Shown in pieces: positions 8,300 to 58,590 of a stretch of 64,000 bases of DNA. Each line of letters opens with the position of its first letter. Position 1 is the stretch's first letter. Under the pieces are notes generated by a model, which did no database searches, was not told the DNA's origin, and saw nothing but the letters and a program-made list of their open reading frames with translations. Both the position numbers and the translations under genes were made by a program. The stretch is from positions 186,001 through 250,000 of IMG/VR virus record IMGVR_UViG_3300045971_000344; one strand, written 5' to 3'.

Positions 8300-8304
8300 G
8301 AACA

Positions 8305-43784: not shown

Positions 43785-44103
43785 GGTTGGGGTGGTGGGA
43801 TTATTCGGACCAGTTGAGCTAAAAGAAGTGTATCACCCACCTAGTCATAAGAGACGGTATAACGATTATGGTCCTGACTGGGATGAACTGTCTAACACTT
43901 GCTTACTCTTGGCAAATCATATCTGTCAGGACTGTCATAAAAACAAGGCAACTAATGCTCATCACATTACTCCCCTGACCAAAGGTGGGGCAAATGTGCT
44001 GAGTAACCTAAAAGCACTCTGTTTTTATTGCCACGCTAAGTATCATACGCACATGAACAAAGGTCGTAGAAAGGAGGACCATCCTAATGGCGGTGGCAAT
44101 TAA
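43777..44103 (+). CDS. Small HNH endonuclease
   Basis: CQDC...AHHI.PL..GG.N...NL.ALC..CH...H; start reassigned to ATG 43777. Confidence 0.85.
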   Translation: MTKVGVVGLFGPVELKEVYHPPSHKRRYNDYGPDWDELSNTCLLLANHICQDCHKNKATNAHHITPLTKGGANVLSNLKALCFYCHAKYHTHMNKGRRKEDHPNGGGN

Positions 44104-44401
44104 ACAACCCAAGTTAAGTTTTAAAAAACAGCCGGGGGCTAAGGGATTATCTTCGGTCGGTAACCCTCATCAGGACGTGACCATTCTATTAGATAAAAAG
44201 CAGATTGGCGTGATTTATGGCCCTACTTGGAGAGACAAAGATAGTAAATGGTCCATCCAGCTAATGGTTAAACATGCTAATAGTTGGAAAAATATTTTGC
44301 TTAAGGCTAAATTTGATACTGAAGAACACGCTAGACAGTTTATGATAAACAATATTGGCCGTATACTCCAAAAATACGAAATACATTACTTAGAAAATTA
44401 A
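44087..44401 (+). CDS. Hypothetical protein
   Basis: 104 aa with GGAGG RBS. Confidence 0.65.
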   Translation: MAVAIKQPKLSFKKQPGAKGLSSVGNPHQDVTILLDKKQIGVIYGPTWRDKDSKWSIQLMVKHANSWKNILLKAKFDTEEHARQFMINNIGRILQKYEIHYLEN

Positions 44402-44416
44402 GATGGGAGATTTACA

Positions 44417-45412: not shown

Positions 45413-45418
45413 AGGTCT

Positions 45419-46441
45419 ATGAGATATGTAGCCATTTCAAGCGGACTAACGGATGAGATCAGAGGTTTGTTCTCAATAGCCGTTAAGGACGATAAACAAC
45501 CGGGTGATATAAGGGAATGGGAAGATAGCCTAAAAGCACTTAAGCCTAAGCTATATGAAGCATATAGATCAGCTATTACTAATAAGCTCATAGAGTGGCG
45601 TGTAGAGCTCGTACCTTACCATGGATTAGGTAGTCGTAGCTGGAGCGTTAATTCCTACAGAGCTGGTCTTAAAGGTGATGACGCGGCGATCAAGCACCCC
45701 GCCCACGTTTTAAGAGAGACGAATTCTAAGACACAGGCCCAGAAGGCAAAAGAAAAAATTGATGAATATAAATACACTAAGGTTTTATCAAGAGAACAGG
45801 GCTTCTATAAGCGCCTACGGTATCTGTATAAATTCAATTCCACTAAATTGTCTGATTGGGACCGACAGTTTATTACCTCTTTGGGTAACCAATTGACCGA
45901 AGGTAGACCTAGTACATTGAAGCAAAAGCAAATAGCGAGTAAATTATTTGAAAAATATAAAGTACCAGAAGGAGCAGAGGCAACTACTATGAGAAAGACT
46001 ACTATAAGGCATACCAAATCTAATAAGTCCAAGACTACTGCTGTGGACATGGATACAGAGTACAAAATGCTTAAGGCTCTTAATAAGTTTGCTGGTAAAG
46101 ACATTAGATTCAAGGACATGATTAAGCTCGAATTTAGGGGTGAAACCGACCACATTGAGATTTTTAGTCACCCTTTGAATTTCAATGTCAGTATAAACAC
46201 AAGCGAATTACTACATAAGTTTAAGGTTCACCCTGGTGCATTCTTGACCTTTTTGTACTATAACGGGGCTCAAAATAACGATCCTCAGAATTTAAAAGCT
46301 TATGTACCATATTCCTTTAGAAGGAAAGGCGTAAAAGCATTCAAAGGCCCTTCAAAATGGGTACATGATAGCGCTGGTTTTTGGAAGCAGATTCCTCTTA
46401 ATCCAGAAGATGAGGATTTTGAAAGCATAGAAGTTGAATAA
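45419..46441 (+). CDS. Leader-bearing two-part hypothetical protein
   Basis: Begins MRYVAISSG; internal in-frame RBS plus ATG at 45989. Confidence 0.7.
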   Translation: MRYVAISSGLTDEIRGLFSIAVKDDKQPGDIREWEDSLKALKPKLYEAYRSAITNKLIEWRVELVPYHGLGSRSWSVNSYRAGLKGDDAAIKHPAHVLRETNSKTQAQKAKEKIDEYKYTKVLSREQGFYKRLRYLYKFNSTKLSDWDRQFITSLGNQLTEGRPSTLKQKQIASKLFEKYKVPEGAEATTMRKTTIRHTKSNKSKTTAVDMDTEYKMLKALNKFAGKDIRFKDMIKLEFRGETDHIEIFSHPLNFNVSINTSELLHKFKVHPGAFLTFLYYNGAQNNDPQNLKAYVPYSFRRKGVKAFKGPSKWVHDSAGFWKQIPLNPEDEDFESIEVE

Positions 46442-46469
46442 CTAATCTCTTAATGAAGGGAGTGTATAA

Positions 46470-46715
46470 ATGAGAAAGACCCTTGTTGTTAATATCCGCC
46501 AAAAAGAACAATCTTATGTAAATGAAATAGAGATAGAAAAGGCTGTAGAAAAGGCTAGAGAGGCCAAAGATTTTCGTCAAGAACTACTAAAATTAGATAG
46601 GATCTTTACGAAAAACCTAAACGAGTCAATTGGTAGTGACCGCTTTATCTATAAGAAGTATAGAGACAAGGTTAGAGGTCTTATGACGGTCCGTATGCCC
46701 GCTGGTTGGGACTGA
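46470..46715 (+). CDS. Small hypothetical protein
   Basis: GGGAG RBS; begins MRKTLVVNI. Confidence 0.6.
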   Translation: MRKTLVVNIRQKEQSYVNEIEIEKAVEKAREAKDFRQELLKLDRIFTKNLNESIGSDRFIYKKYRDKVRGLMTVRMPAGWD

Positions 46716-46746
46716 TCACTAAAAATACAAGCATATCTAAGCAAAT

Positions 46747-46755
46747 CGTAATTTA
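46747..46755 (+). promoter_or_regulatory. Putative late promoter CGTAATTTA
   Basis: Same motif as 11280 and 30741, 25 nt upstream of 46780. Confidence 0.45.
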
Positions 46756-46779
46756 TTTATGATTGAGGAGGTTTGATCT

Positions 46780-47238
46780 ATGCGAAAGATAAGGGTTGCT
46801 ATTGCATCCGTAAAGAACGAATTATCTTATCAGTGGTACAAAATAAAGAGTCGGGTACAGCCCATGGAACTCCGAGGTAAAGAAGTACGACTCAATCAGG
46901 GTGATGTTATCGGTTTCCGTCCAGGTTCCAATGGAAAGACCACTCGCATGGTCCTCAAGGATAGCATCGGGTACGTTATGAGTCCTACCAAAGAACAGGT
47001 TGAGTATTTATTGAAGAAATGCGAGCCCTTAATTGGTGGCGCAATAGACACAGCCAAGATAGGCTTAGTAACTGAACCTAAGGTTAGCGTTAAAGACAGG
47101 CGCATACTTGAAGAACTAAAGGACATGTCTAATATCTTGAAAAGGTATAAAGACATAACTGACATAAAGATCGAAAATAAACGTTTGCTATTTAGGTACG
47201 ATAATCGTCCTTACAGTATTATTAGCGACCCTTCTTAA
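46780..47238 (+). CDS. Leader-bearing hypothetical protein
   Basis: Begins MRKIRVAIAS; GAGGAGG RBS. Confidence 0.7.
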   Translation: MRKIRVAIASVKNELSYQWYKIKSRVQPMELRGKEVRLNQGDVIGFRPGSNGKTTRMVLKDSIGYVMSPTKEQVEYLLKKCEPLIGGAIDTAKIGLVTEPKVSVKDRRILEELKDMSNILKRYKDITDIKIENKRLLFRYDNRPYSIISDPS

Positions 47239-47249
47239 AGGAGAAGTGT

Positions 47250-47801
47250 ATGAAGACCATTAGTGTAGAAATAAGTAGCGGAGATAACCAGTTAGTGTCC
47301 CAAGCAATACGGATCCTAACTAAGGTTGTTGACGCGGGTTTTAAGAAGAAAAAGGGTAAGGGCGCTACGGGGAAAAATACTGTACAAAAGGCCATAGAGA
47401 AATTCGTTAGAAGTCTTCCTGAAAAGGATCTTCAGGAATTGATAGAAAGTAAGTACGAAAATACGGAGACCTCTGAAGATAGATTACTCGCTTTGGCTTA
47501 CAATATGAAGCAGCAGTCTACTAGGATGCCAAAAGAAAAGATAGCGGAACGGTCGGAACGCCATAAGGCAATGATAACAAAGCGTAAGAACAGAATAAAA
47601 GAACTTGAAATGAAGAAAAAGAACAGTACAAACCCAGATACTGTAAAGCGTATCTCACAGATTGTTACCAAGCATAAAGATCGTATTGACCGCCATAATG
47701 AAGCTCTTAAGTATTACAAAATGCTTGGGTCGTTAAAGCCCAAGACGCATAAAGACATAGTTAAAAAGAAGACCAATCCAATGGGCCAGTCTACTAAATA
47801 A
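47250..47801 (+). CDS. Leader-bearing basic helical protein
   Basis: Begins MKTISVEISSG. Confidence 0.7.
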   Translation: MKTISVEISSGDNQLVSQAIRILTKVVDAGFKKKKGKGATGKNTVQKAIEKFVRSLPEKDLQELIESKYENTETSEDRLLALAYNMKQQSTRMPKEKIAERSERHKAMITKRKNRIKELEMKKKNSTNPDTVKRISQIVTKHKDRIDRHNEALKYYKMLGSLKPKTHKDIVKKKTNPMGQSTK

Positions 47802-47813
47802 GGATAAATAAAA

Positions 47814-48206
47814 ATGAGAAAAATCAGTGTCCGTATTGTCACAACCGCGGCTGGCGCAGGAGAAGCATGGTGGAACAATCAGAGCAAAGAGCAGAAGGCG
47901 GCGTACATCAAAGCTCATCCAAATAGTAAGTATGCTAAACAAGCGGGAGCAGAAAAAGAGACTGTGGTAAACCAACATCCAAAGAAACTTATAACTGATT
48001 CTAAACTTAATAAGAAACAAGAAAAAATAAAGGAGCTTAACGTCCAGTTAAAAAATGAAAAGGAGACGTTAAAAAAGCTTACGAAACAACTACCAAAGTA
48101 TAGATGGGGCTCATCCGCTAGTTTATGTAGATCAGAAATAGCCGATATTAAAGAAAAGATACAAAAGATTGAAAAGCAACTACAAAAATATGAAGATAAA
48201 ATCTAA
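47814..48206 (+). CDS. Leader plus WW-HPxSKY module protein
   Basis: MRKISVRIVTTAAG..EAWWNNQSKEQKAAYIKAHPNSKYAK. Confidence 0.75.
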   Translation: MRKISVRIVTTAAGAGEAWWNNQSKEQKAAYIKAHPNSKYAKQAGAEKETVVNQHPKKLITDSKLNKKQEKIKELNVQLKNEKETLKKLTKQLPKYRWGSSASLCRSEIADIKEKIQKIEKQLQKYEDKI

Positions 48207-48227
48207 CAAAAAAGAAATAAAGGAGAA

Positions 48228-48398
48228 ATGAAAAAGAAAAATACGACTAACCCAGATACTGTAAAGCGTATCTCTCAGATCGTGACCAAGCATAATGAGG
48301 CACTAAAGTATTACAAAATGCTTGGGTCGTTAAAGCCCAAGACACATAAAGACATAGTTAAGAAGAAGACCAACCCTATGGGACAGTCTACTAAGTAA
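48228..48398 (+). CDS. 56-aa duplicated copy of the 47250 gene C-terminus
   Basis: AAGGAG RBS. MKKKNTTNPDTVKRISQ...NPMGQSTK is near-identical to 47610-47801, with a 21-nt deletion. Confidence 0.5.
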   Translation: MKKKNTTNPDTVKRISQIVTKHNEALKYYKMLGSLKPKTHKDIVKKKTNPMGQSTK

Positions 48399-48410
48399 AA
48401 GGGAGATGTT

Positions 48411-48896
48411 ATGAGAAGAATAATTGTAAAGATTGTAACAACTGCTTCTGGGGATGACTGGTGGAATAGTCAGAGCAAAGAGCAGAAAGCGGCTTACATA
48501 AAAGCCCATCCTAGAAGTAAGTACGCTAAACAAGCTGGTTCGGCTGCACCTAAAGCCACTAAAACAAAGACCGAAAAGGTAGAATCACTAAAAAATAAAT
48601 TGGTAGTACATCATAAGCCATCAAAAAATTTAACGAAAGAGCAAATTGAAGATAATAAAAGGTATAATAAGTTTAAAGATAAAGAGAATCTTAAAAAAGC
48701 GAAGCTTTTAGCTGAAGGTGCTGAAGAAAAAATTAAAGCCCTTAAGGCTAAACTTAAAAAAGAAAATGACGCTAGCATAAAAACGCGCATCCAAAAACAA
48801 ATACAAAAGTTAGAGTCAGCTGTTCGTATAACGGCTATGTACTCTAGAGAAAAGGTTGACGGTTACTATAATTCAGACCGACATTATCAAAGTTAA
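48411..48896 (+). CDS. Leader plus WW-HPxSKY module protein
   Basis: MRRIIVKIVTTASGDDWWNSQSKEQKAAYIKAHPRSKYAK. Confidence 0.75.
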   Translation: MRRIIVKIVTTASGDDWWNSQSKEQKAAYIKAHPRSKYAKQAGSAAPKATKTKTEKVESLKNKLVVHHKPSKNLTKEQIEDNKRYNKFKDKENLKKAKLLAEGAEEKIKALKAKLKKENDASIKTRIQKQIQKLESAVRITAMYSREKVDGYYNSDRHYQS

Positions 48897-48950
48897 GAAG
48901 AAGACCAACCCTATGGGTAATAAACCCTAATACAAAAAAAGGAGAAGTGT

Positions 48951-50141
48951 ATGAAGAAGATTAGCGTACGTATCAGCAGCATGAACAAGGCAACTGCAGC
49001 AAGAACTCGTATGAACTTTGAGAGCGAAGGTGATGAAGGCATGAGCTTCAGGGCGGCCAAGGGCGTCAATGATGAGCTGAACGTAGTTGAAGGCGATGTT
49101 ATTTTTGATAGTGAGAACGGAATTAAATTCAAGCCTTCTCGGGCATTCCGAAAAGAAGTACCTATGAAGACAGGTAATACGATTAAGGTAGAAAAGGATG
49201 CAGAAGGTGAGCTTACCTTTGAGTTCGAAGGTAATGATATTAAATTTAAGCCTTCTCGCGCTCTTAAGAACAGCGTAATCCTTAAGAATAACAGTAAGAT
49301 CAAAGTAGCAAAAGACAATCACGGCGATATCATCTTTGAAGGCATTGACGGACTTGGATTCAAACCATCTAGCAAGATGAAGCGTATGCTCACAGCCTCG
49401 TCTGACTATACAGAGATTTCATCTGATAGTGGTGATGCATGGTGGGCGAAACAAAGCAAAGAGCAGAAAGCGGCTTATATAAAAGCCCACCCTAGAAGTA
49501 AGTACGCTAAACAATCAGGTGGACAAACTGCTCCAGCTAAAGAAAAGACAGGCGGGTCTAAGTCAACTAGCGCTCCAGAGCATTGGTTTAAGAATAAAGA
49601 AAAGCCTGGCACTAAAGAATATGACGATGCTATAATAGACGCTCTAAAGCAAAATAGTAAAGGATCTACATATGTAAATAAGAATGATAAACCTCTCTTT
49701 CTTAAGATAAAGAATCCTTCAGAAAGAGTACAAATGGAGGCAGTAAGAATTCAACCTTCTGTTTATGAGGCTATAAAAAATCCTAGTGAAAAAGTTTCTC
49801 TCTCTTACCTTAAATCTTTCCCTAGGGGAATAATGGATATAAAAAATCCTAGTGAAACTATGCTTAAAGTAGTTGAAAAGAAGGATCCCTTTTGGATAAA
49901 AGAACTGGAAAAGAAGAACGGTTCATCTAAAACAACCGTAGGTCCTAAAGATACTAACGGGCCTAAAGTAAAGGCTTTGAAAGAAAAGATTTCGGAGCTT
50001 ACTGAAAAAATGAATAAGTGGAAAGAAAAATATAGGGCGTCTAAATCAGCTACGGATAAGATAGTAGCAAAGACACACTATAAATCTACTAAAGCTGAAC
50101 TGACTAAGGTTAATCGCGAGATCAGGAAGCTTTCTAAGTAA
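48951..50141 (+). CDS. Leader, FKPS repeats, WW-HPxSKY module and IKNPSE repeats
   Basis: All motifs visible in the translation. Confidence 0.75.
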   Translation: MKKISVRISSMNKATAARTRMNFESEGDEGMSFRAAKGVNDELNVVEGDVIFDSENGIKFKPSRAFRKEVPMKTGNTIKVEKDAEGELTFEFEGNDIKFKPSRALKNSVILKNNSKIKVAKDNHGDIIFEGIDGLGFKPSSKMKRMLTASSDYTEISSDSGDAWWAKQSKEQKAAYIKAHPRSKYAKQSGGQTAPAKEKTGGSKSTSAPEHWFKNKEKPGTKEYDDAIIDALKQNSKGSTYVNKNDKPLFLKIKNPSERVQMEAVRIQPSVYEAIKNPSEKVSLSYLKSFPRGIMDIKNPSETMLKVVEKKDPFWIKELEKKNGSSKTTVGPKDTNGPKVKALKEKISELTEKMNKWKEKYRASKSATDKIVAKTHYKSTKAELTKVNREIRKLSK

Positions 50142-50155
50142 AGGACTAATTAACC

Positions 50156-51355
50156 ATGGCTATCAGAATATGGGAATATGGGTCATCCCCAGAAGCAGTA
50201 AATCAGAGTACGACTAATGTCCAGATTGTGGTTGGAAACCCTATTTCCTGTTCTGAGCAATTTTTGTCTACCGAGACGGGGGTTCCTTTGGAGCCCCTTT
50301 CTGGGTATCCTATTGTCCAAGTATTAGAGGGAGTTGACCTCATTACATCCACAATAGGTTATAGAAACAATAACGCTCTGCCCGGGGAGTGGACCGCGGA
50401 TCTAACAATCCCGCCCACAATAGAATTCAATTCTGGTAAAGAGAAGATACTTACCTTATCTTGGATATTTAAGTCCCTTGAAGGAACGGAAAAGTCCAAT
50501 CAGTATATAACCGTTGTACCCAAAGACGATGTCTACTCTGAGGACTACAAAGAGATTGTTTTACTTGGACCAGTACAGGACTTGAAGGTTACTGTCCCTT
50601 ACATAATAAACGTTCTGGCAGGTGACATTGCAGAATATACGTTATACGATGAAAACTCCCCTATCTCTTCAGGGAAAGCCGCAGACTCGGCTATAAATGG
50701 TCCTCACAGCGTTCTGTCTTTTACTGTAATCAGCCCCTTGTTTGTTCCACGACTTCGTCCATATAATCTTGTTATTACCTTGCGCTTTAACACCGCTGTC
50801 CGTCAGTTGTTTTCCAACGTATATCAGATTAATCCTACCATACTTAGTGCGATGCAGGCTCTAGAACTATCCATAAATAAGGCAAATCAAATTGAGACAA
50901 TTAGAGGACTCCAGTTCCGTGAGGTAGACCTTTTACAAGGATTAACCCGGGGACTCGACTACTTCAATAACGTACCGCCTACCCTAACGAGTTTCACCGG
51001 CGTCTGCATGACAGGCGGTATAAGAGAGGGCTGGCTCGTCTGCGCGTCAATCCGGTCCCTTAGAGCACAGCTACAGTCGGAGGGGATGTTCCAATTTGAT
51101 TTTTCTGGACAAAATATTAGTCTTAATGTTGACCGTCAGCAGGCAATAGAGAGTGCTTGTGGTCATTATGAATCATTAGTCGATACTATGGTCAGGCCCT
51201 TGAAGATCATACTGGGTAAAAAGGGCGTAGTAAACGGTGATGGCTCATTAGGTGATAAATTGGCATTGATGTCTTCAATGGGTCTGACCAGACTGAGTAA
51301 TAATGCTATAACTCGTTCTAAGTTAGGCAATCCATTATACCCTAGGACATGGTGA
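50156..51355 (+). CDS. Putative neck/head-tail adaptor structural protein
   Basis: Beta-rich N-terminus and a helical C-terminus with LDYFN..PP.LT and FDFSGQNISLNVDR. Function inferred. Confidence 0.45.
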   Translation: MAIRIWEYGSSPEAVNQSTTNVQIVVGNPISCSEQFLSTETGVPLEPLSGYPIVQVLEGVDLITSTIGYRNNNALPGEWTADLTIPPTIEFNSGKEKILTLSWIFKSLEGTEKSNQYITVVPKDDVYSEDYKEIVLLGPVQDLKVTVPYIINVLAGDIAEYTLYDENSPISSGKAADSAINGPHSVLSFTVISPLFVPRLRPYNLVITLRFNTAVRQLFSNVYQINPTILSAMQALELSINKANQIETIRGLQFREVDLLQGLTRGLDYFNNVPPTLTSFTGVCMTGGIREGWLVCASIRSLRAQLQSEGMFQFDFSGQNISLNVDRQQAIESACGHYESLVDTMVRPLKIILGKKGVVNGDGSLGDKLALMSSMGLTRLSNNAITRSKLGNPLYPRTW

Positions 51356-51359
51356 TAAT

Positions 51360-51596
51360 ATTAGATACACAACTATTGCTAAAACAACTAAGCGTGGTAA
51401 TTTAGATTACGACCCTGAAGATATCCCTGAGTATAAGAAGGGTGCGGTCAAAGCAAAGGCCGATGGTATGTTTGTTATGTTTTATGATAAAAAGGGAAAT
51501 GAACTGGGTAGAAAGAAAATAGGAAACGCTAATCAAGCACAAGAATGCGCGGAATCAAATAATGTATTCTATAAGAAATATGGAGTTATGCTATGA
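51360..51596 (+). CDS. Unannotated 78-aa ORF with probable ATT start (or start-mutated pseudogene)
   Basis: ATT AGA TAC ACA ACT ATT GCT reads (M)RYTTIA, which is leader-like. GGTGA lies upstream, the frame fills the gap, and its stop forms an ATGA overlap with the next gene. Confidence 0.55.
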   Translation: MRYTTIAKTTKRGNLDYDPEDIPEYKKGAVKAKADGMFVMFYDKKGNELGRKKIGNANQAQECAESNNVFYKKYGVML

Positions 51597-52027
51597 GGTA
51601 CGTTACCCTATCTGTATCTACTAATCCAAATAGACCTAAATTTGGGACCTGTATTACTAAAGGTAAATTATGTCTATGCTTTGAAAATGCTCGTTTAGAG
51701 TATTGGGCCCAAAAGGCTAAGGGTAATGATTGCAAGTACATAGTTGGACTTGTTTATGGTGTTCCAAAAGAATTTGAGAAGGAAAAACAAGATAGTAAAC
51801 CCAGTGGTCTTTCTCACGCATGGGTAGAACTTGAAGATAATACAATAGTGGACCCCACACCCTATGCAATAGGTAAGTGGGTTCAAAGTAGAGAAATAGA
51901 AAATAATACTGCTCCAAAAGAGTATGCACTTAAGTATTGGAGTAAAAAGCATCCTTTAGAATACAAGATAAATAAGGAAATAAAAGAATCAAAATTAAGG
52001 GCGGTACTAAAATACTTTCCTCTATAG
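51593..52027 (+). CDS. Transglutaminase/papain-like Cys-His-Asp protein with leader
   Basis: CFENA...HAWVE...VDPT; begins MRYVTLSVST. Confidence 0.6.
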   Translation: MRYVTLSVSTNPNRPKFGTCITKGKLCLCFENARLEYWAQKAKGNDCKYIVGLVYGVPKEFEKEKQDSKPSGLSHAWVELEDNTIVDPTPYAIGKWVQSREIENNTAPKEYALKYWSKKHPLEYKINKEIKESKLRAVLKYFPL

Positions 52028-52040
52028 ACAGGAATAAATT

Positions 52041-52313
52041 ATGCAAGTAGATACTGAGAAAATGGTTCCCACCCAAATGAAGTCCAAGCTTAAGAAGAAG
52101 GGCTATTGGATCGTATCTTGTGAGTCCGCGGGTGGTGGTAACCGTGCCCACAGCTATTGGTTCGTCTATTGGAATGACCTAGACGACTCGGTCCACGTAC
52201 AGACCGATGGTACCTTAGGTGGGGCGAGTAAGTCCTATAATAAGCAAAAGGCAATGGAAATCGCCATAACAAAAAGATATAAAGAACTTTATACGAAAGG
52301 ACAATTGCTATGA
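52041..52313 (+). CDS. Hypothetical protein
   Basis: 90 aa; ATGA overlap with the next gene. Confidence 0.6.
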   Translation: MQVDTEKMVPTQMKSKLKKKGYWIVSCESAGGGNRAHSYWFVYWNDLDDSVHVQTDGTLGGASKSYNKQKAMEIAITKRYKELYTKGQLL

Positions 52314-52798
52314 AAAAGATAACGGTTAGAATCACCACCGCAAAGACCGATGAGCCTGTAGTAGAAAATCAATTTGCAGAGATCGTAAAAGAGATGCGGC
52401 AAATGCCTGCAGTTAAGAACAAAGAAGCCGTGTTGAAGAAGCGTAAAAACTGTATTCACCTGGAATATAAGGGCGCTAATTACTATATCGTACGCCATAT
52501 CCATGAATTGAAGAAACTTAGAGAAGAGTCTTCTGAAACTCCAGGGGACTTAGACTTTATGGATTCTTATGGCTTTAAATACTATGGGTTAACTGAAGGT
52601 AACCACGTATTTTCTTATTCTAAATTCGTGCCATCTAAAGGTATAACTTTTAGTTGTTCCGTTCGAGTAGCTAAAGATGGAACTTGGAGTGGTGGTGGGT
52701 CTGATGCTAAATTTCCTAAAAACAGAGGGTCTAACCTTTCTCAGTTAAAGACTTACGCTAATTCAGTTAAAAAGAAAATGAATTCCTTAGGTTCTTAA
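52310..52798 (+). CDS. Leader-bearing hypothetical protein
   Basis: Begins MKKITVRITTA. Confidence 0.7.
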   Translation: MKKITVRITTAKTDEPVVENQFAEIVKEMRQMPAVKNKEAVLKKRKNCIHLEYKGANYYIVRHIHELKKLREESSETPGDLDFMDSYGFKYYGLTEGNHVFSYSKFVPSKGITFSCSVRVAKDGTWSGGGSDAKFPKNRGSNLSQLKTYANSVKKKMNSLGS

Positions 52799-52825
52799 AT
52801 AAAAGAAATTGAAGGAGCAATAGTA

Positions 52826-53197
52826 ATGGCAACAATTTGTGTTGACTTTGATGGAACTGTAGTTACCCATGACTACCCAAGAGTAGGTAAAGATATAGGA
52901 GCGGTTCCTGTACTAAAAAGATTAGTCGAAGACGGGCATAGACTAATCTTATGGACAATGAGAGACAAAGCTGAGTTACAAGATGCAGTCAATTGGTTTT
53001 TTCAGAATAATATACCTCTTTGGGGTGTGAATGAGAACCCAGAACAACATACTTGGACGGACAGTCCAAAGGCTTATGGCCAACATTATATAGACGATTG
53101 TGCGGTTGGCACTCCCTTAATTCATGGTGTACACAGTAGACCTTATATTGATTGGGCACGTATGGAGCAATTATTGTTGGAGATGGGGGTACTATGA
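52826..53197 (+). CDS. HAD-superfamily hydrolase (small capless type)
   Basis: VDFDGT (motif I), LWTMR (motif II) and K..YIDD (motifs III/IV). Confidence 0.85.
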   Translation: MATICVDFDGTVVTHDYPRVGKDIGAVPVLKRLVEDGHRLILWTMRDKAELQDAVNWFFQNNIPLWGVNENPEQHTWTDSPKAYGQHYIDDCAVGTPLIHGVHSRPYIDWARMEQLLLEMGVL

Positions 53198-53397
53198 AGA
53201 TCAAACGACTAAAAATAACAACTGCGGCTGATACAGATAAGCATGACTACATAATTGCCGTAAAAGAGATGCTAGATAGCCATGATGAAAATGACCACAA
53301 TAAGACACAGTTCGATAACTACTCTGATAAAGCGCGCCAATTATTGGACAACAATAAAGATCGTGATAGAATGACAGTACTACTTTTATCTACCTGA
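53194..53397 (+). CDS. Small leader-bearing hypothetical protein
   Basis: Start reassigned to ATG 53194; begins MKIKRLKITTAA. Confidence 0.6.
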   Translation: MKIKRLKITTAADTDKHDYIIAVKEMLDSHDENDHNKTQFDNYSDKARQLLDNNKDRDRMTVLLLST

Positions 53398-53410
53398 TAA
53401 GGATAATCTT

Positions 53411-54727
53411 ATGATATGTATTAAGCGATATAGGGTCCATATAAGAACCACAGCTAAAGAAGTATTGGCTAAAAACGATGACGAATGGTTTAAGGGCCTA
53501 ACTAAAGAACAGCAAAAGCAGTACTTGGAAGAACACCCAAATAGTAAATTTGCTAAAACCTTTAAGGCTAAAGAAGATGAGAATGGCCAATCAGGATCTA
53601 AAAAGACTGGCCCAGCCAAAGTAAAAAAAGAAAAGACTGACCCTTATAAAGATGTACCCGAAGAAGATAAAAAGGTCATGCTGGCGGCAAAGACTCGCGG
53701 ATATAGAGTGCCTCCTGCGTGGAGAAATGTGTGGCTCAATCCTAACCCAAAGGCTGATCTTCAGGTTAAAGGTAAGGATGCAAAGGGCCGTACTCAAAGT
53801 GTATATACTGCGTCTTTTAGAGCCGCTCAGGATATAAAGAAGTTTAACCGCCTAAGAGATTTCACTAAGGCCTATAAAGGTATGCGGACCCAGATAGACA
53901 AGGACTTTGATGAATCTCCTGAGGCACAGTGTTTATATTTGATAGCCAAGACAGGATTCAGGATTGGCAGCTCCAAAGAGACTGGCGCGAAGGTTAAAGC
54001 GTACGGAGCATCTACTCTTACTGTTGACCATATCTCAATAGATGGGGACATTATTAACTTTGATTTTACTGGTAAAAAGGGCGTACACCAGAAACATGAG
54101 ATTGTAGATGCAAAGCTCGCTAAAATGCTGAGTACTAAGAAAGAGGGCTTATTATTTGAGACGAATGGAGCAAAGATACATAAGTATTTAGAATCCTTAA
54201 ATCCAGAACAAAAATTTGAGGTCAAAGATTTTAGAACATACGTTGCTACCTCCACAGCTCTATCTTCGGTATCCTCTATGGAAGCCCCTAGGACTAAAGC
54301 AGAATATATAAAATCCGTAAATAAGGTCTGTAAGACTGTTTCAGAAAAATTAGGTAACTCCCCAGACATGGCTAAAAAGTCTTATATAGATCCTACCGTC
54401 TTCAAGGAATGGCAATCGAATATAACTGACCCGGATGTAGAGACCTCGAGTGATTCTATTGGGCCTTATTTCTGTCTAGCTATGGACAAAGAACAGCAAC
54501 TTATGCAGGACTTTATAGAGTGCAATCACTATAGGATTCCAGATAAGGTAGTTATAGCCCTTAAGAGAGTTATTAAACTTCCTCGTGGAAAAGATAGAGA
54601 GATCGCCTATTCTGCCTTCCAAAAGCTCGCAAAGGTTTTCAACTTAGTAGATACTTCAAGTAAAAAGGTCTACATAGACTCTCTCCGTGAGATCGAAAAG
54701 ATTGCACGTTCACAGGGTGATTTATGA
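53411..54727 (+). CDS. DNA topoisomerase IB (poxvirus/bacterial type) with N-terminal leader and WF-HPNSKF module
   Basis: Motifs PPAW..V, G.D.KGR.Q..Y, GFRIG, F.GKKG, KDFRT and LGN.P..AKKSYI (catalytic Tyr). Confidence 0.9.
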   Translation: MICIKRYRVHIRTTAKEVLAKNDDEWFKGLTKEQQKQYLEEHPNSKFAKTFKAKEDENGQSGSKKTGPAKVKKEKTDPYKDVPEEDKKVMLAAKTRGYRVPPAWRNVWLNPNPKADLQVKGKDAKGRTQSVYTASFRAAQDIKKFNRLRDFTKAYKGMRTQIDKDFDESPEAQCLYLIAKTGFRIGSSKETGAKVKAYGASTLTVDHISIDGDIINFDFTGKKGVHQKHEIVDAKLAKMLSTKKEGLLFETNGAKIHKYLESLNPEQKFEVKDFRTYVATSTALSSVSSMEAPRTKAEYIKSVNKVCKTVSEKLGNSPDMAKKSYIDPTVFKEWQSNITDPDVETSSDSIGPYFCLAMDKEQQLMQDFIECNHYRIPDKVVIALKRVIKLPRGKDREIAYSAFQKLAKVFNLVDTSSKKVYIDSLREIEKIARSQGDL

Positions 54728-54972
54728 GTCGTCTCGTAGTTATCGCCGGCTCGGCCTGTAAAGGCTGTGGGGAGTCGAATACTATAAAAGACAAGCGTAG
54801 GGACTACGTAGATGTAGATAACAGCGATGAAATGCAGACTTTTAGGGTCTGTCGTCTTTGTGGACACAGGGAAATTATAAAGACACGAATGACGGTCCGT
54901 AAACGCGCAAGGCAGGATAAGCTGGCTGGTCTAGCTGACCTAATAAACGAATTGACCAATAGAGGGCAATAG
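54724..54972 (+). CDS. Zinc-ribbon protein
   Basis: CKGC...CRLC. Confidence 0.65.
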   Translation: MSRLVVIAGSACKGCGESNTIKDKRRDYVDVDNSDEMQTFRVCRLCGHREIIKTRMTVRKRARQDKLAGLADLINELTNRGQ

Positions 54973-54974
54973 AT

Positions 54975-55292
54975 ATGAAGATCAAAGGAATTACTATAGC
55001 TTCTTCTATAGATGACCGGCTGGAGACCATATTCAAGCAATTAGGTGCAAAGTACATGAACCATAACGGACAGTCAGTATTGGTCTTGAATACTACTCCA
55101 GACGTAATGGCACAAAAGGTTGAGATAGCGTATGAACAGTTGAGGAAACTGGGATATGATAATAAAAGCCAGTCCCAAAAGCATTTCTGGTATATAGTAG
55201 ATGCTCAAAATGAATTACCTGAGGTTCAGATTGAGTCACAAGGTTCTGAGGGTTTTATCAAAGAAAAGCACAATTATACTATAACTTGGTAA
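54975..55292 (+). CDS. Leader-bearing hypothetical protein
   Basis: Begins MKIKGITIASS. Confidence 0.65.
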   Translation: MKIKGITIASSIDDRLETIFKQLGAKYMNHNGQSVLVLNTTPDVMAQKVEIAYEQLRKLGYDNKSQSQKHFWYIVDAQNELPEVQIESQGSEGFIKEKHNYTITW

Positions 55293-55333
55293 GGGTCTTT
55301 GTAATTTATTAATAACAATGATGAGGAGAAATC

Positions 55334-55633
55334 ATGAGAACGATAAGGGTAAGTATTGAGACCACCAAGACTACTGCGGCATCTCCGAAGGGAATTATCC
55401 AAGTATTCTTCTGTAATGGCTTGAATACTGCAATGGGTAAAGGCGTTATCTTTCCTACTAAGGCTGAGGCAGTTGAGTATGCTATTAGCAAGTTAAGAAC
55501 AAGCAGTAATTTATTTAGTTCAAAAGTATGTTTAGATACAGTTGACTCTAAAGGATGGACTTCACAAGAAACTCTCGCTGAGTTTGTAAAAAACAGCTCG
55601 GGTAAGGTTTGCAAATTAGTTCCAGTAAAATAA
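55334..55633 (+). CDS. Leader-bearing hypothetical protein
   Basis: Begins MRTIRVSIETT; preceded by GTAATTTA (55301) and GAGGAG. Confidence 0.65.
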   Translation: MRTIRVSIETTKTTAASPKGIIQVFFCNGLNTAMGKGVIFPTKAEAVEYAISKLRTSSNLFSSKVCLDTVDSKGWTSQETLAEFVKNSSGKVCKLVPVK

Positions 55634-55697
55634 TAAATATCAGGAGCACTTGTCCATGACAAGACAAATACAAACAGCAGGACAAAGGAGAAGGGTC

Positions 55698-56522
55698 ATG
55701 AAAGAAATCGGGAAATCAATTATTCAGGAATTAGCGGCAAACATGGATCGTCTCACTGTTGGCATCGAGAGCTTCAAGACACACGGAGACAAGAGCAAGG
55801 TTCGTGTATCAGTAATTGCAACTTCGGACTCAAACAAATCTGATATCTTGAAGTCAATTAACTCACAGTTCGGTGGTCGTCTTAGGGCAGTTGCTCGCTC
55901 ATTCCGTATCGTAGAATCGTCTAATGCGGACCGTAATAACGTAACTTTTAAGCTCCAGGGATACGTTGTACCAAATGTAGAAATAGTGGCCGCATCTTCT
56001 GAGCAGGGAAAGAAAATGAAGTGTGTTGCGTCCAATATGTTTATGGACCAGTCTGATTGCATTTGGAGCAAAACTGGAGATTTCTTATATAAGAAATCAG
56101 ATGTTGAGACCGCAGAAGAACTTAATCAGTTTCTTACTGAGTGTAGCTCAACCACAACCCGGGTCAGAAAGGGCCTTGATTTTGAGACCGTAGTGGCCTC
56201 CGCAGGAGATTTCGTCCGTTACTTGAGTAAAGGTGAAATGTGCTGTGGTATTGTAGTAGCGGCCGATGAAACAAATCATAAGCTCATGGTACTGGCCGAA
56301 GGTGAAGAAGACCCAGAAGTTATTGATACTTTTGACGTCCAGGATAGTCTGCCCGTAGATGATGAGAAAGTACGCTTTCCTGAAGAGACGGACATGGTTG
56401 AGACCTCGGCGTCAGCCGTAGATATTAACGCCATCGTTTCTTACTACAAGCGTTGGTTTACCTACAATCCCAACTACGCCCAGATGCTGATTGACCGATT
56501 GAATCAGCATGCCTTTTGCTAA
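55698..56522 (+). CDS. Putative head/virion structural protein
   Basis: Start at ATG 55698 (AAGGAG RBS). Several internal [VI]x[AT][SA] sites (IVAAS, CVAS, VVAS, VETSAS). Confidence 0.6.
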   Translation: MKEIGKSIIQELAANMDRLTVGIESFKTHGDKSKVRVSVIATSDSNKSDILKSINSQFGGRLRAVARSFRIVESSNADRNNVTFKLQGYVVPNVEIVAASSEQGKKMKCVASNMFMDQSDCIWSKTGDFLYKKSDVETAEELNQFLTECSSTTTRVRKGLDFETVVASAGDFVRYLSKGEMCCGIVVAADETNHKLMVLAEGEEDPEVIDTFDVQDSLPVDDEKVRFPEETDMVETSASAVDINAIVSYYKRWFTYNPNYAQMLIDRLNQHAFC

Positions 56523-56612
56523 AAAGAATTTACCCATATAGACTGTTTCGTTTTTGACCGCACACGTCCTTTAAGGATGACCTAACTGAGCGTAAAACAA
56601 ATATGTGGGTTC

Positions 56613-56650
56613 TGGGGTGGGGTGGTGATTAACTTTACTACCCCACCCCA
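56613..56650 (+). terminator. Strong GC-rich hairpin (no U-tract)
   Basis: TGGGGTGGGGTGGTGA/TTACTACCCCACCCCA, a 16-bp stem with two G-U pairs on the plus strand. Confidence 0.55.
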
Positions 56651-56683
56651 ACAATATTATTATTATATACTGTAGGAGAGTTT

Positions 56684-57013
56684 ATGAAAGTACGTTCAAT
56701 TGCCATTAAAGGCGAAGGAATAGAACTGGCTAAAGTTGCGATCCATGCAAAGAGAAACCGAATGAAGGGTATGTACGATAACACAAACCCTACGGCTATG
56801 GATATTTATAAAGCCCGTCATAAGTATGACTTTAAGCACGAGTTCAATAAGTTCATAGAAGATAACTACGTAGATGTTATATCCAAGACAGACCGTAAGG
56901 CTCTAATGCAGGCCGTAGAGACACACTACAATGAGGGCTGTATAGAGAACGTAGAAGACCTTAAAAGACATATTGAGGTCATAGGTAAGCGTGAAGGCAT
57001 AATCTTTGATTAA
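56684..57013 (+). CDS. Hypothetical protein
   Basis: AGGAG RBS; 109 aa. Confidence 0.65.
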   Translation: MKVRSIAIKGEGIELAKVAIHAKRNRMKGMYDNTNPTAMDIYKARHKYDFKHEFNKFIEDNYVDVISKTDRKALMQAVETHYNEGCIENVEDLKRHIEVIGKREGIIFD

Positions 57014-57031
57014 ACCATATAGGTGTGAACT

Positions 57032-57691
57032 ATGAAGACCCCAAAACGTACAGAAGTGGAATTGAGTACCTCAAGTAAGAGTAAGAAGCCTGTTAAAGTA
57101 AAGAAGGATTGTACTGATGTAAAGCCCGCCTTAGAAGTGAAAAAGAAGAAAAGGACTCCTGAACAGAAAGCAAAACGACTTGAAAAAATAAAGGCCAAAG
57201 TAGTGGCGGAAGAAGCGGTTGCACTCAAGCTCATTGATGACATTCATTTAAAGGCAAAAAAGAAGTTCAATGGTGAAGATGACCATAAAGAAGTTTATTT
57301 GGATATGTTTCGCCAATTGAGAAGAATAATAAAGAAAACAGAACGGTCCTGTCTTAAGTCAAAGAACGGTCAAGGTGCGTATCAACTTGCTACGTTGTAT
57401 ACTCAGTTAAGGGAAGTTCTGGCTGAGATTAGAGCCTACACGGATCTTTCTGACCATGTTGACTCTATGATTGAGCGCGTAATGAAACCCCTTTTTACTA
57501 CATTAGTACAAAGTACATCCAATGCAATGTACCAAACAAAAATAAAAATAAAAGACAAATTGAAAGAAAAAAGGGTCAGGCGGACCTTCGAAGACATAGA
57601 TGAAATAACACTTGACCAGGCGAATCAATTGCAGACACAGTATGATAAGGCCTGTCAGACAATAAGAGAGATTTTAATAGGAAATACGTAG
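57032..57691 (+). CDS. Helical hypothetical protein with basic N-terminus
   Basis: 219 aa. Confidence 0.7.
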   Translation: MKTPKRTEVELSTSSKSKKPVKVKKDCTDVKPALEVKKKKRTPEQKAKRLEKIKAKVVAEEAVALKLIDDIHLKAKKKFNGEDDHKEVYLDMFRQLRRIIKKTERSCLKSKNGQGAYQLATLYTQLREVLAEIRAYTDLSDHVDSMIERVMKPLFTTLVQSTSNAMYQTKIKIKDKLKEKRVRRTFEDIDEITLDQANQLQTQYDKACQTIREILIGNT

Positions 57692-57720
57692 TCATTAATA
57701 AAGATTTGAGGTAAACCTTT

Positions 57721-58590
57721 ATGGCATATCATAAGTTACAAGTAACTATTTCAGCGGCAGGTGGTGGAAAGTCCACGCATGACCATCCTAAGGGACTTTC
57801 TAAGCCAGCTAGCTCTGGTGATAACTGGTTTGACCGTTTAAGTGAGGACGAGCAGACGGAATATATAGAGTCGCATCCTAATTCAAAGTATGCTAAAAAT
57901 ATTCACCGTGTTGACCACGAAGACCAATCGGATAAGAGTAAGAAGAAATCCGGATCTGATACTAAAAATCCAAAAGCAATGCGCCATGTATTGGCTGATA
58001 AAATAAAGGTCCTACCTAAGAAACACAAAGAATTTTTTGAGACCGAGCAGGACCAACCCAATTCAGAACAACGTTCAGGTATTGCAAAGCACATACGATT
58101 GAACCATAAAGAAATAGTTAAGCACATGAAAGGTCAGATTGTAGAGTGGAAAGATGGATGCGGGGCTATTGCAAAGCTCGCTACTGGTAAGTCCATTTCG
58201 GCACATGAAAAGAAAGCATTGAAGGCCCTAGTTATAGATGCATCCGTTATAGCTGCTTCTGTTGCTGTAACAGGTGGGTTTGCTCACGGAGCAGCGCTGG
58301 CATTGAAGCACGTTGGATTCGATGTCTTAAAAGATGTTGTACTCAAAACGGTTATAAGAGGAACTACAAGAGCAATGGGCGCATCTACAGGAGTAACTGG
58401 ACTGGTAGGCTTAGAAGCCTTGGCTACTACAGCTGCCTCTAAGAAAGTAAACCCAGATAGAATAAACGATAAGATAATGAGCATGCTGGTTAAACAGCTT
58501 GCGGCCTATATTGAAAAGGGTGATATCCCTAAAGAGGCTTGGGATAAGGCTATTGATGAATTGGCTGCAACTAATAGGAAGCGTAAATGA
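57721..58590 (+). CDS. Leader plus WF-HPNSKY module protein with hydrophobic Gly/Ala-rich segments
   Basis: DNWFDRLSEDEQTEYIESHPNSKYAK; hydrophobic stretch ALVIDASVIAASVAVTGGFAHGAALAL. Confidence 0.7.
   Translation: MAYHKLQVTISAAGGGKSTHDHPKGLSKPASSGDNWFDRLSEDEQTEYIESHPNSKYAKNIHRVDHEDQSDKSKKKSGSDTKNPKAMRHVLADKIKVLPKKHKEFFETEQDQPNSEQRSGIAKHIRLNHKEIVKHMKGQIVEWKDGCGAIAKLATGKSISAHEKKALKALVIDASVIAASVAVTGGFAHGAALALKHVGFDVLKDVVLKTVIRGTTRAMGASTGVTGLVGLEALATTAASKKVNPDRINDKIMSMLVKQLAAYIEKGDIPKEAWDKAIDELAATNRKRK

What the first reader, a model, noticed from the sequence alone, without database searches (positions are those of the whole stretch)
47859..57900. Portable ~27-aa W[WF]xx[QL][ST]xE[QE]xxxY[IL]xxHP[NR]SK[YF]AK module on five different proteins
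Seen in sequence: the module occurs in 47814 (EAWWNNQSKEQKAAYIKAHPNSKYAK), 48411 (DDWWNSQSKEQKAAYIKAHPRSKYAK), internally in 48951 (DAWWAKQSKEQKAAYIKAHPRSKYAK), in topoisomerase IB 53411 (DEWFKGLTKEQQKQYLEEHPNSKFAK) and in 57721 (DNWFDRLSEDEQTEYIESHPNSKYAK). In each case it follows within a few residues of a putative cleavage site (TTAAG, TTASG, TEISS, RTTA, PASS) and precedes a Lys/Ser linker and an unrelated payload. Inference: after processing it would sit at the new N-terminus, so it could be a second-tier signal for ejection into the host, DNA tethering or inner-body binding. That would make a two-part addressing system.
Basis: partly seen in the sequence, partly recalled or inferred. Interest (0 to 1): 0.78.

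Follow-up and report, generated by a model that had tools for sequence, protein, structure and literature searches.

The report
Shared cargo-tag domain on jumbo-phage proteins
A small, very conserved three-helix domain that no database describes sits near the start of five different basic proteins (one a DNA topoisomerase) in a pond jumbo phage and hundreds of uncultured relatives, always among head genes, so it is probably a shared handle for proteins carried inside the virion, though that is not proven.

Summary
Five in-frame copies of the module lie on the + strand at the stated places and nowhere else in six frames. The consensus as written fits four. The 57721 copy has D where E is required.

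A profile of the five copies finds 729 protein clusters among 1.84 billion representatives. None was confirmed in 596 Gb of cellular genomes.

AlphaFold2 models the module confidently as three short helices of about 35 residues. It has no match in Pfam, NCBIfam, PDB or full-text literature.

Carriers are mostly very basic proteins (median pI 9.8). Payloads include topoisomerase IB, a NUDIX fusion, DUF4116 repeats, histone-H1-like tails and a 2530-aa polyvalent protein.

Module genes form same-strand arrays beside the major capsid protein, head-tail connector or terminase genes. The module usually follows a short, lineage-specific N-terminal leader. Each element also occurs without the other.

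Limits:
- Three of the five window copies are recent local duplicates.
- The module is sometimes internal or C-terminal.
- Nothing shows cleavage, virion residence or ejection.

Best reading: a portable handle for virion-internal cargo, working alongside a T4 CTS-like leader.

The parts
47868..47939 (+). Module copy 1, in ORF 47814-48206 (130 aa: leader, module, Lys/Glu-rich coiled coil). The AF2 three-helix unit spans residues 12-46, about nt 47847-47951.
48459..48530 (+). Module copy 2, in ORF 48411-48896 (161 aa: leader, module, coiled coil). Tandem paralogue of copy 1.
49440..49511 (+). Module copy 3, internal (residues 164-187) in ORF 48951-50141 (396 aa). The order is leader, KFKPS-type repeats, module, a payload similar to proteins that carry DUF4116, then a coiled coil.
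53486..53557 (+). Module copy 4, residues 26-49 of topoisomerase IB (ORF 53411-54727). The order is leader, module, Lys-rich linker, then a complete bacterial-type topoisomerase IB core at residues 96-337.
57826..57897 (+). Module copy 5, residues 36-59 of ORF 57721-58590 (289 aa). This is a conserved family: leader, module, basic linker, helical domain with a Gly/Ala-rich hydrophobic hairpin, and a GDIPxEAWDxAI C-terminus. It is the orthologue of BcepSaruman gp075 and BCSR5 QRE00245.
47594..48539 (+). Tandem duplication. 47594-47948 is repeated at 48212-48539. It includes a truncated duplicate ORF (48228-48398) of the 3' end of gene 47250-47801. A third partial copy lies at 48888-48917.
43104..57760 (+). 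Run of + strand genes whose products begin with the short leader M[RK]xIxVxI..T[TS]A. Module genes are 47814, 48411, 48951, 53411 and 57721. Leader-only genes are 43104, 46780, 47250, 52310, 54975, 55334 and 56684.
50156..51355 (+). Head-tail connector gene (phrog_17327) in the middle of the cluster. It is the synteny anchor shared with other module-bearing loci.
3836..4930 (-). Major head protein (phrog_2522). It places the phage in the Lu11/PaBG/Y3/Sauron jumbo-myovirus clade. Its homologues lie next to module-gene arrays in L011, L014/L015 and BcepSaruman.

Best explanation
The module is an autonomously folding mini-domain of about 35 residues: three short helices with a core of W, W/F, L, Y, I and Y, and an invariant HPxSK turn. 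A clade of mostly uncultured jumbo myoviruses, and at least one other phage lineage, use it as a common handle on proteins that are built into the virion interior and probably leave it with the DNA.

Proposed mechanism (inferred, not shown):
1. A short, lineage-specific N-terminal leader acts like the T4 capsid targeting sequence.
2. The folded module just behind it stays on the protein. It docks the cargo to a conserved partner inside the prohead, more likely a protein surface than DNA.
3. The Lys-rich stretch that follows, and the basic payloads, then associate with the packaged genome.

Because the handle is one compact unit, recombination can move it onto new cargos. Examples are topoisomerase IB, NUDIX, DUF4116 proteins, H1-like proteins and segments of a polyvalent effector protein.

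Shown here: the domain, its conservation, its portability, its restriction to phage-type sequences, and its position among head and packaging genes. Inferred: virion residence, docking, any cleavage, and ejection.
For: - Family size and conservation: 729 clusters at E <= 1e-3. Y, H, P, S and K are nearly invariant (97-100%) in 161 modules.
- Fold: AF2 gives the same three helices at pLDDT 88-93 in two separate models, with leader and linker disordered.
- Purifying selection: differences among the tandem copies are mainly synonymous.
- Conservation relative to the capsid: the module is about 62% identical between the window and BcepSaruman by my count from the translation. Their capsid proteins are 37% identical.
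- Portability: the five payloads are unrelated. Payload Pfam families include Topoisom_I, LPD1, HNH, RelA_SpoT, S-AdoMet lyase, GNAT, DUF4116, DUF3008 and DUF3175. The 8 closest topoisomerase IB orthologues carry leader plus module, while Lu11, phiRSL1 and BCSR5 topoisomerase IB lack it. In Lu11 and phiRSL1 the gene sits among metabolism genes.
- Phage restriction: no confirmed match, and 0 exact pattern hits, in 596 Gb of cellular genomes, against 8 stretches in IMG/VR contigs of 12.6-295 kb, mostly above 140 kb.
- Context: same-strand arrays of up to 7 module genes lie next to the capsid protein, the phrog_16710 virion protein, the connector or the terminase.
- Position: W lies within 25 residues of the N-terminus in 96 of 161 modules.
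- Carrier chemistry: median pI 9.8, and the next 30 residues are net positive in 83%.
- Precedent: in the polyvalent protein P0060, each of three internal modules is preceded by the same LAALGITAD-type unit. Such proteins are held to be injected with phage DNA (PMC7824862). The T4 CTS is a known transplantable capsid address (PMC9026906).
Against: - No proteomics, structure or genetics exists for any carrier. BcepSaruman gp075 and BCSR5 QRE00245 are annotated only as hypothetical proteins.
- No prohead protease was recognised in the window, and no cleavage motif is proven.
- The module can be C-terminal (10 of 161) or repeated internally.
- Cultured relatives with the same capsid family showed no module in the stretches examined or in a low-sensitivity tblastn of their genomes. 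The handle is therefore not needed for head assembly in the clade.
- The docking partner is unknown.
- Gene neighbourhood is only indirect evidence of virion residence.
Confidence: 0.45

Rival explanations
1. The module is a DNA tether. It is a small DNA-binding domain, like the globular domain of a linker histone between basic tails. It fixes the carriers to the packaged genome so that they travel with it.
For: - Carriers are very basic, and many have histone-H1-like Lys/Ala tails on one or both sides of the module.
- Topoisomerase IB acts on DNA, and HNH domains are typically nucleases.
- Mean module charge is +2.6.
- The module is more conserved than the capsid protein, which would suit a universal ligand such as DNA.
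- The W..LS.E..Y stretch resembles the helix 2-3 junction of HMG boxes.
Against: - Module net charge ranges from -6 to +8, and 26 of 161 are net negative. The window's 57721 copy has pI 4.6.
- The conserved positions are mostly aromatic or aliphatic core residues plus the HPxSK turn, not a basic face.
- HMG-box matches are not significant (E 0.2-0.9).
- There are no fold matches.
Confidence: 0.2
2. Leader and module together form one propeptide of about 45 residues. It targets the protein into the prohead and is then cut off and discarded, so the module is not at the mature N-terminus.
For: - Leader and module are adjacent as a unit, including in internal repeats (P0007, P0060, BcepSaruman gp075).
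- Giant-phage propeptides of 20-254 residues are removed by prohead proteases (PMC10052503).
Against: - No conserved acidic or other cleavage motif follows the module (positions +24 to +31).
- Some modules are C-terminal, and some have no leader.
- Such strong conservation of a folded domain would be unusual for a discarded peptide.
Confidence: 0.15
3. The module is unrelated to the virion. It is a general protein-protein interaction or oligomerisation domain, or it binds a conserved host factor, and it is used by intracellular phage proteins.
For: - No direct virion evidence exists.
- Payloads such as NUDIX, S-AdoMet lyase, GNAT and RelA/SpoT would act in the cytoplasm.
- Jumbo-phage gene clusters mix functions.
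Against: - The module is consistently next to capsid, connector or terminase genes in divergent lineages.
- It associates with an N-terminal leader shared by many genes of the structural cluster.
- Topoisomerase IB copies that carry the module lie in structural gene clusters (window, L002). The module-less Lu11 and phiRSL1 copies lie among metabolism genes.
Confidence: 0.15
4. The module is a chance or low-complexity resemblance, or an assembly artefact of a repeated sequence.
For: - Three copies lie in a tandem duplication.
- Logan contigs break at a 38-nt exact repeat.
Against: - The profile scores 42 proteins at E <= 1e-10 and 729 at E <= 1e-3.
- Copies 4 and 5 are only 58-65% identical to the others at DNA level.
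- Two pond runs hold the region with no differing letters. The 619-nt piece between the repeats, seen in X1, has single-copy depth.
Confidence: 0.02

Closest known systems
T4 capsid targeting sequence (CTS) of internal proteins IPI-III and Alt (PMC9026906)
   Same: - A short N-terminal address shared by unrelated, mostly basic proteins that are packaged in the head and injected.
- It can be transplanted to foreign cargo.
- It evolves by attachment to new payloads.
   Different: - The CTS is about 10 unstructured residues removed by gp21 after Glu.
- Here the conserved element is a folded three-helix domain of about 35 residues lying behind a separate leader.
- It may be internal, repeated or C-terminal.
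- Cleavage is unknown, and there is no sequence similarity.
Propeptides of ejection and internal head proteins in phiKZ-like giant phages such as SPN3US (PMC10052503, PMC5694885)
   Same: - Jumbo myoviruses with many internal head proteins.
- Paralogue arrays.
- N-terminal regions used during head assembly.
- The small-x-acidic residues just before the WW (AGE, SGD, GDD) resemble the (A/S/G)-X-E protease motif.
   Different: - These phages belong to a different clade.
- No shared conserved domain is reported there.
- Their propeptides are removed.
- Asp rather than Glu dominates at position -2 here (58% D).
Coat-binding helix-turn-helix of P22 scaffolding protein and encapsulin cargo-loading peptides (from my own knowledge, not tested here)
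   Same: - A small, portable, mostly helical element whose only job is to dock cargo to the inside of an HK97-fold shell.
- It can be fused to foreign proteins.
   Different: - Those elements are C-terminal and unrelated in sequence.
- Their partner is known.
- No partner has been identified here.
Polyvalent proteins of phages and conjugative elements (Iyer et al. 2017, cited in PMC7824862)
   Same: - One carrier, P0060 (2530 aa), has LPD1, HNH and RelA/SpoT domains with four modules between them.
- Other phage topoisomerase IB proteins carry PF04233, PF06381 or PF18823. From memory, these are head-protein or polyvalent-protein domains.
   Different: - The window's carriers are separate small proteins, not one giant protein.
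- No Pfam model, the LPD families included, matched the module in the proteins scanned.
HMG box
   Same: Local pattern W..L[ST].E[EQ]K..Y at a helix-turn-helix junction, followed by HP.[YF]K-like residues.
   Different: - The match is not significant (E 0.2-0.9).
- The module is half the length of an HMG box.
- No structural match was found.
- I treat the resemblance as convergent.
Virion-packaged topoisomerase IB of poxviruses (from my own knowledge)
   Same: A type IB topoisomerase carried in the virus particle for use immediately after entry. The window's enzyme keeps the catalytic motifs.
   Different: - Packaging of the phage enzyme is only inferred from its leader+module and gene position.
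- The addressing mechanism is unrelated.

Membership tests
T4-type capsid targeting sequence | Sits at the extreme N-terminus, about 10-20 residues long | tested here: not met
   The module starts 2-28 residues after Met when N-terminal. It is internal in 48 of 161 cases and C-terminal in 10 of 161. The separate leader, not the module, occupies the CTS position.
T4-type capsid targeting sequence | Removed by a gp21-type prohead protease at a defined motif | not testable with these tools
   No protease was recognised in the window. A small-x-acidic motif precedes the WW, but cleavage needs mass spectrometry.
T4-type capsid targeting sequence | Sufficient to load foreign cargo into heads | not testable with these tools
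   This needs reporter fusions in BcepSaruman, BcepSauron or BCSR5.
HMG box (PF00505-type) | Significant profile match and an L-shaped three-helix fold of about 75 residues | tested here: not met
   PDB profile search gives E 0.22 and 0.88 over 15 residues. No fold match was found.
Any curated family (Pfam-A, NCBIfam, PHROGs annotation) | Module region matched by a model at or above its cut-off | tested here: not met
   no model covers the module. The literature motif search found 0 papers.
Type IB topoisomerase (payload of ORF 53411-54727) | Topoisom_I catalytic core plus bacterial N-terminal domain | tested here: met
   PF01028 at 8.6e-27 and PF21338 at 2.8e-6. D. radiodurans TopIB 2f4q matches at E 1.7e-23 over residues 96-337.
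Type IB topoisomerase (payload of ORF 53411-54727) | Catalytic Arg, Lys, Arg, Asn/His and Tyr residues | tested here: inconclusive
   The motifs FRIGS, KAYGASTL, KDFRTY, LGNSP and SYIDP align with those of 2f4q. Assigning residues to catalytic roles rests on my knowledge of the family, and activity is untested.
Polyvalent protein (Iyer et al. 2017) | Giant multidomain protein with LPD domains and effector enzymes | tested here: not met
   This is met for relative P0060 (LPD1, HNH_3, RelA_SpoT). It is not met for the window's five carriers, which are 130-438 aa and carry at most one recognised enzyme domain.
Virion-internal or ejection protein (functional class) | Gene lies in a head or packaging gene cluster | tested here: met
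   the genes lie near connector, capsid protein, phrog_16710 or terminase genes in the window and in L002, L011, L012, L014, L029, L037, L045-47 and L053.
Virion-internal or ejection protein (functional class) | Protein detected in purified virions and delivered to the host | not testable with these tools
   No proteomic data exist for any carrier. The papers read (PMC7412058, bioRxiv 2026.10.21.760668) do not report it.

The most novel reading that the evidence does not exclude
A two-part capsid address not described before. A lineage-specific leader, plus a universal folded 'WW...HPxSKYAK' handle, lets jumbo phages load arbitrary enzymes into the head and inject them with the genome. The cargo would include a virion-borne topoisomerase IB, as in poxviruses. 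If so, the handle is a ready-made transplantable tag for protein delivery by phage, and a sequence marker that identifies injected proteins in metagenomes.
Probability: 0.3. Interest if true: 0.8.

Novelty: new variant of a known kind. Interest (0 to 1): 0.66.

Why it matters
Internal and ejected virion proteins are the first phage molecules to meet host defences, but they are very hard to recognise from sequence.

A conserved tag shared by hundreds of such candidates would give a way to list injected proteins in uncultured jumbo phages. It would point to a topoisomerase IB that may be carried in the particle. It would also offer a compact folded tag for loading foreign proteins into capsids.

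Three cultured phages (BcepSaruman, BcepSauron, BCSR5) carry the module, so the idea can be tested directly.

Tried and rejected
- A homologous-protein search restricted to the module region returned only the query itself.
- Foldseek against PDB and VIA-align wide on the 49-residue model gave no meaningful match (best Z 3.1).
- The ESM Atlas feature search gave scores of 0.57 or less and no structural hit.
- A PDB profile search gave only non-significant IdeS and HMG-box stretches.
- A tblastn search of 50,697 cultured phage records with a consensus-like module found only BcepSaruman and BcepSauron, at E 0.2-0.5. BCSR5 was found later through gp075.
- The prohead protease was not found. The 252-aa ORF 40938-41696 has no similarity to the annotated head maturation protease of Erwinia phage pEa_SNUABM_3. 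No Pfam or PHROG protease hit appeared in the ORFs scanned.
- The promoter and terminator scan of 43-59 kb showed no enrichment.
- The AF2 model of the 57721 protein matched only uncharacterised phage proteins (BCSR5, PaBG, BcepSaruman). PDB hits such as ClyA were not significant.
- The PaBG and Matilda papers contain nothing on propeptides or on these proteins.
Full report
**1. Where the window comes from**

The window is part of a 294,944-bp viral contig, IMGVR_UViG_3300045971_000344. Two pond metagenome runs hold it.

Its major head protein (3836-4930, minus strand, phrog_2522) is 42-47% identical to those of Erwinia phages Y3, Yoloswag and the pEa_SNUABM series, Pseudomonas phage Lu11 and Dickeya phage JA11. 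It is about 37% identical to that of Burkholderia phage BcepSauron. PMC7824862 places phiRSL1, Lu11 and PaBG of this group in its jumbo-phage subgroup 2.2, and PMC7412058 calls its PaBG group (11 members) the 'Lupandier' group.

The finding lies in a + strand block (about 43-59 kb). This block holds the head-tail connector gene (50156-51355, phrog_17327) and runs into tail-fibre-like genes.

**2. Checking the observation**

The consensus as written fits four of them. The 57721 copy has Asp at the fixed Glu position.

Copies 1-3 belong to a local tandem duplication of about 0.6 kb. The duplication also copies the end of the upstream gene and has left a truncated 56-codon ORF at 48228-48398. Logan contigs of both runs break at a 38-nt exact repeat whose depth is double. 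In run X1 the 619-nt piece between the repeats has single-copy depth. The arrangement is therefore consistent with independent assemblies.

Differences among copies 1-3 are mainly synonymous, which shows selection on the peptide. The regions after the module share no significant similarity between any two of the five proteins.

**3. How widespread the module is**

A 37-column profile of the five copies was searched against 1.84 billion representative proteins. It gave 729 hits at E <= 1e-3 and 42 at E <= 1e-10.

In the best 150 proteins I located 161 modules.
- The consensus is AA[AG]D.W[WF]..L[ST]K..Q..YIK.HP.SKYAK.
- Y, P, S, H and K are nearly invariant (97-100%).
- The first W lies within 25 residues of the N-terminus in 96 modules.
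- Forty-eight modules lie beyond residue 60, and ten of the 161 are C-terminal.
- Several proteins carry two to four copies.

The module was not found in cellular genomes. A degenerate-pattern scan with tblastn confirmation over 596 Gb of species-representative bacterial and archaeal genomes confirmed nothing. An exact degenerate DNA pattern for YIK[AE]HP.SKYA hit 0 stretches there, against 8 in IMG/VR contigs of 12.6-295 kb, six of them above 140 kb.

Among 50,697 cultured phage records, I found the module only in these:
- BcepSaruman and BcepSauron gp075 (three copies each).
- BCSR5 QRE00245 (one internal copy).

No Pfam, NCBIfam or PHROG annotation covers the module. PDB sequences gave no significant match. 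A full-text search for the motif returned no paper.

**4. Structure**

AlphaFold2, run with a 145-sequence alignment of leader+module segments, predicts three short helices: residues 12-21, 25-34 and 39-46 of the 47814 protein. pLDDT is 88-90 over residues 21-40, and the first 11 residues are not ordered.

An independent model of the whole 57721 protein again gives the module at pLDDT about 90. A disordered leader region and a disordered basic linker flank it.

The conserved aromatic and aliphatic positions (W, W/F, L, Y, I, Y) are what a bundle this small would need as its core. S/T at +5 and S at +19 sit at helix starts. The module is therefore about 35 residues, not 27, and includes the conserved AA[AG]D stretch. 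Fold searches found no relative. For so small a domain this says little either way.

**5. What the module is attached to**

Carriers are mostly very basic: median pI is 9.8, and 82% are above 9. The 30 residues after the module are net positive in 83% of cases. The five window payloads have pI 9.4-9.9.

Recognisable payloads:
- Topoisomerase IB, found repeatedly.
- A 2530-aa polyvalent protein with LPD1, a zinc ribbon, HNH and RelA/SpoT, in which four modules sit between the enzyme domains. Three of those modules are preceded by a near-identical LAALGITAD-type unit.
- Single cases of S-AdoMet lyase, GNAT, DUF3175, DUF3008 plus DUF7717, and DUF4116 repeats.
- A NUDIX-like N-terminal domain in BCSR5, recognised by eye from its NUDIX-box-like sequence.
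- Many Lys/Ala-rich histone-H1-like proteins.

The window's topoisomerase IB is a complete bacterial-type enzyme. It matches Deinococcus TopIB 2f4q at E 1.7e-23 over residues 96-337, and the motifs around the active-site residues are conserved. Leader, module and a Lys-rich linker have been added at residues 1-95.

Of 120 close topoisomerase IB homologues, 12 carry leader+module, including the eight nearest. The Lu11 and phiRSL1 enzymes lack both elements and lie among nucleotide-metabolism genes.

Other phage topoisomerase IB proteins carry PF04233, PF06381 or PF18823. From memory, these are the Mu-F/SPP1 gp7 head protein, a portal-like DUF1073 and a polyvalent-protein domain. That would fit repeated recruitment of this enzyme to the capsid, but I could not re-check the names.

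**6. Gene neighbourhood**

An HMM search of all fetched loci shows that module genes occur in same-strand arrays: seven in 17 kb in L037, five in L050, and four each in L011 and L049.

BLASTP against the window's ORFs places these arrays directly beside structural genes:
- Capsid protein, the phrog_16710 virion protein and the 613-aa phrog_20988 protein (L011, L014/L015, BcepSaruman).
- The head-tail connector (L002, L037, L045-47, L053).

The polyvalent carrier P0060 lies in a lineage that shares no genes with the window. There it sits 5 kb upstream of a large terminase gene.

The 57721 family is the only carrier found in cultured relatives. Its layout is leader, module, linker, helical domain with a hydrophobic Gly/Ala-rich hairpin, and a conserved GDIPxEAWDxAI end. 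It may be the module's original home.

**7. Leader and module are separate elements**

At least twelve + strand genes in the cluster start with M[RK]xIxVxI..T[TS]A, and only five of them have the module.

Leader-like N-termini without a module occur in the syntenic region of Erwinia phage Y3 (MKIFVSLAAT, MKIKLNVAETLASES...) and in BCSR5 (MKIEAAARLQA...). The BCSR5 type of leader is the one that precedes the module in several metagenomic proteins.

Leader sequences differ by lineage: strand-like in the window, MIEQAKL...AEVAAD in L037. The module stays the same. Some H1-like proteins start directly with the module.

This supports a two-part arrangement. It does not show what either part does.

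**8. Mechanism**

The most economical reading has three parts.
1. The leader plays the role of the T4 capsid targeting sequence. That sequence is a short N-terminal address, sufficient to load foreign proteins into the head, and is removed by the prohead protease (PMC9026906).
2. The module is a retained, folded handle that docks cargo to a conserved internal partner.
3. The basic linker and payload then sit on the DNA.

I favour a protein partner over DNA. Module charge varies from -6 to +8, and the 57721 copy is acidic (pI 4.6). The invariant positions are core residues plus the HPxSK turn, not a basic face.

The residues just before the WW (AGE, SGD, GDD) resemble the (A/S/G)-X-E sites of giant-phage prohead proteases (PMC10052503). 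Asp dominates at position -2, however, and in T4 an Asp at the cleavage position blocks processing (PMC9026906). Cleavage there is therefore uncertain.

Rivals are DNA tethering, removal of leader+module together as one propeptide, and a non-virion interaction domain. All remain possible. Confidences are given in the Rival explanations section.

**9. Verdict**

It is an undescribed, phage-restricted mini-domain family with clear domain shuffling.

Context, payloads and separability from the leader all favour it. Processing, virion residence and delivery are untested.

The domain itself is new. The concept of a portable address for head cargo is known from T4, so I rate it a new variant of a known kind.

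Noticed in passing
window 47594-48539 and 48888-48917: A tandem duplication of about 0.6 kb copies the 3' end of gene 47250-47801 plus the leader and module of the next gene. It leaves a truncated 56-codon ORF (48228-48398). A third partial copy lies just before gene 48951. Logan contigs break at a 38-nt exact repeat (47709-47746) with double depth.
   Followed up: yes
window 43726-44103 and 58587-58868: Two paralogous small HNH endonuclease genes bracket the leader/module cluster. Homologues of the 58587 gene lie near module genes in L021, L037, L042, L044, L046 and L053.
   Followed up: partly
window 43104-57760, + strand: At least twelve gene products start with the same short leader M[RK]xIxVxI..T[TS]A, and seven of these genes have no module. 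Related leader types occur in Erwinia phage Y3 and Burkholderia phage BCSR5. This may be a clade-wide capsid-targeting or propeptide signal that deserves its own study.
   Followed up: partly
L037:14588-16399: This topoisomerase IB, in a high-GC relative, starts with a leader-like MYAVVRRLLETAEE followed by FVEREHPRRSDG. That looks like a remnant of the module's second half without the WW helix.
   Followed up: no
proteins P0175, P0180, P0227, P0279, P0186, P0191 and others: Other phage-type topoisomerase IB proteins are fused to PF06381, PF04233 or PF18823. From memory, these are a portal-like DUF1073, the Mu-F/SPP1 gp7 head protein and a polyvalent-protein domain.
   Followed up: no
window 48951-49440 and protein P0007: The N-terminal 160 residues of the 48951 protein contain repeats of the type [IF]KFKPS...[IV]KV.KD..G...FE. 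The three-module protein P0007 has similar FKGSKGNEDF[KR]FKP repeats between its modules.
   Followed up: no
window 7757-8305 (minus strand): A ferritin-like gene (PF00210, 2.2e-16) lies close to the head genes. A ferritin gene is also present on the 121-kb contig that carries P0007.
   Followed up: no
window 11350-16584, 17680-22941, 24436-28092 and 31357-33720 (minus strand): Very large virion or tail-fibre-like proteins (787-1753 aa) give many repeated PHROG tail-fibre and collagen-like matches.
   Followed up: no
window 52826-53197: A small gene inside the cluster shares 69-84% DNA identity over 62-290 nt with genes annotated as polynucleotide kinase/phosphatase or phosphoheptose isomerase in crAss001-like Bacteroides phages and Aeromonas phage phiA8-29.
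   Followed up: no
L020:779-2416: A 545-aa module carrier gives a sub-threshold Pfam hit to the ATLF metalloprotease-type domain (E 2.8e-4, 21 bits against a cut-off of 27.4). This is too weak to name.
   Followed up: no
window 57721-58590: The AF2 model of this conserved carrier shows an all-helical domain with a long hydrophobic Gly/Ala-rich helical hairpin (residues 161-218). The only matches are uncharacterised proteins of BCSR5, PaBG and BcepSaruman. A membrane-active role after ejection is possible but untested.
   Followed up: partly
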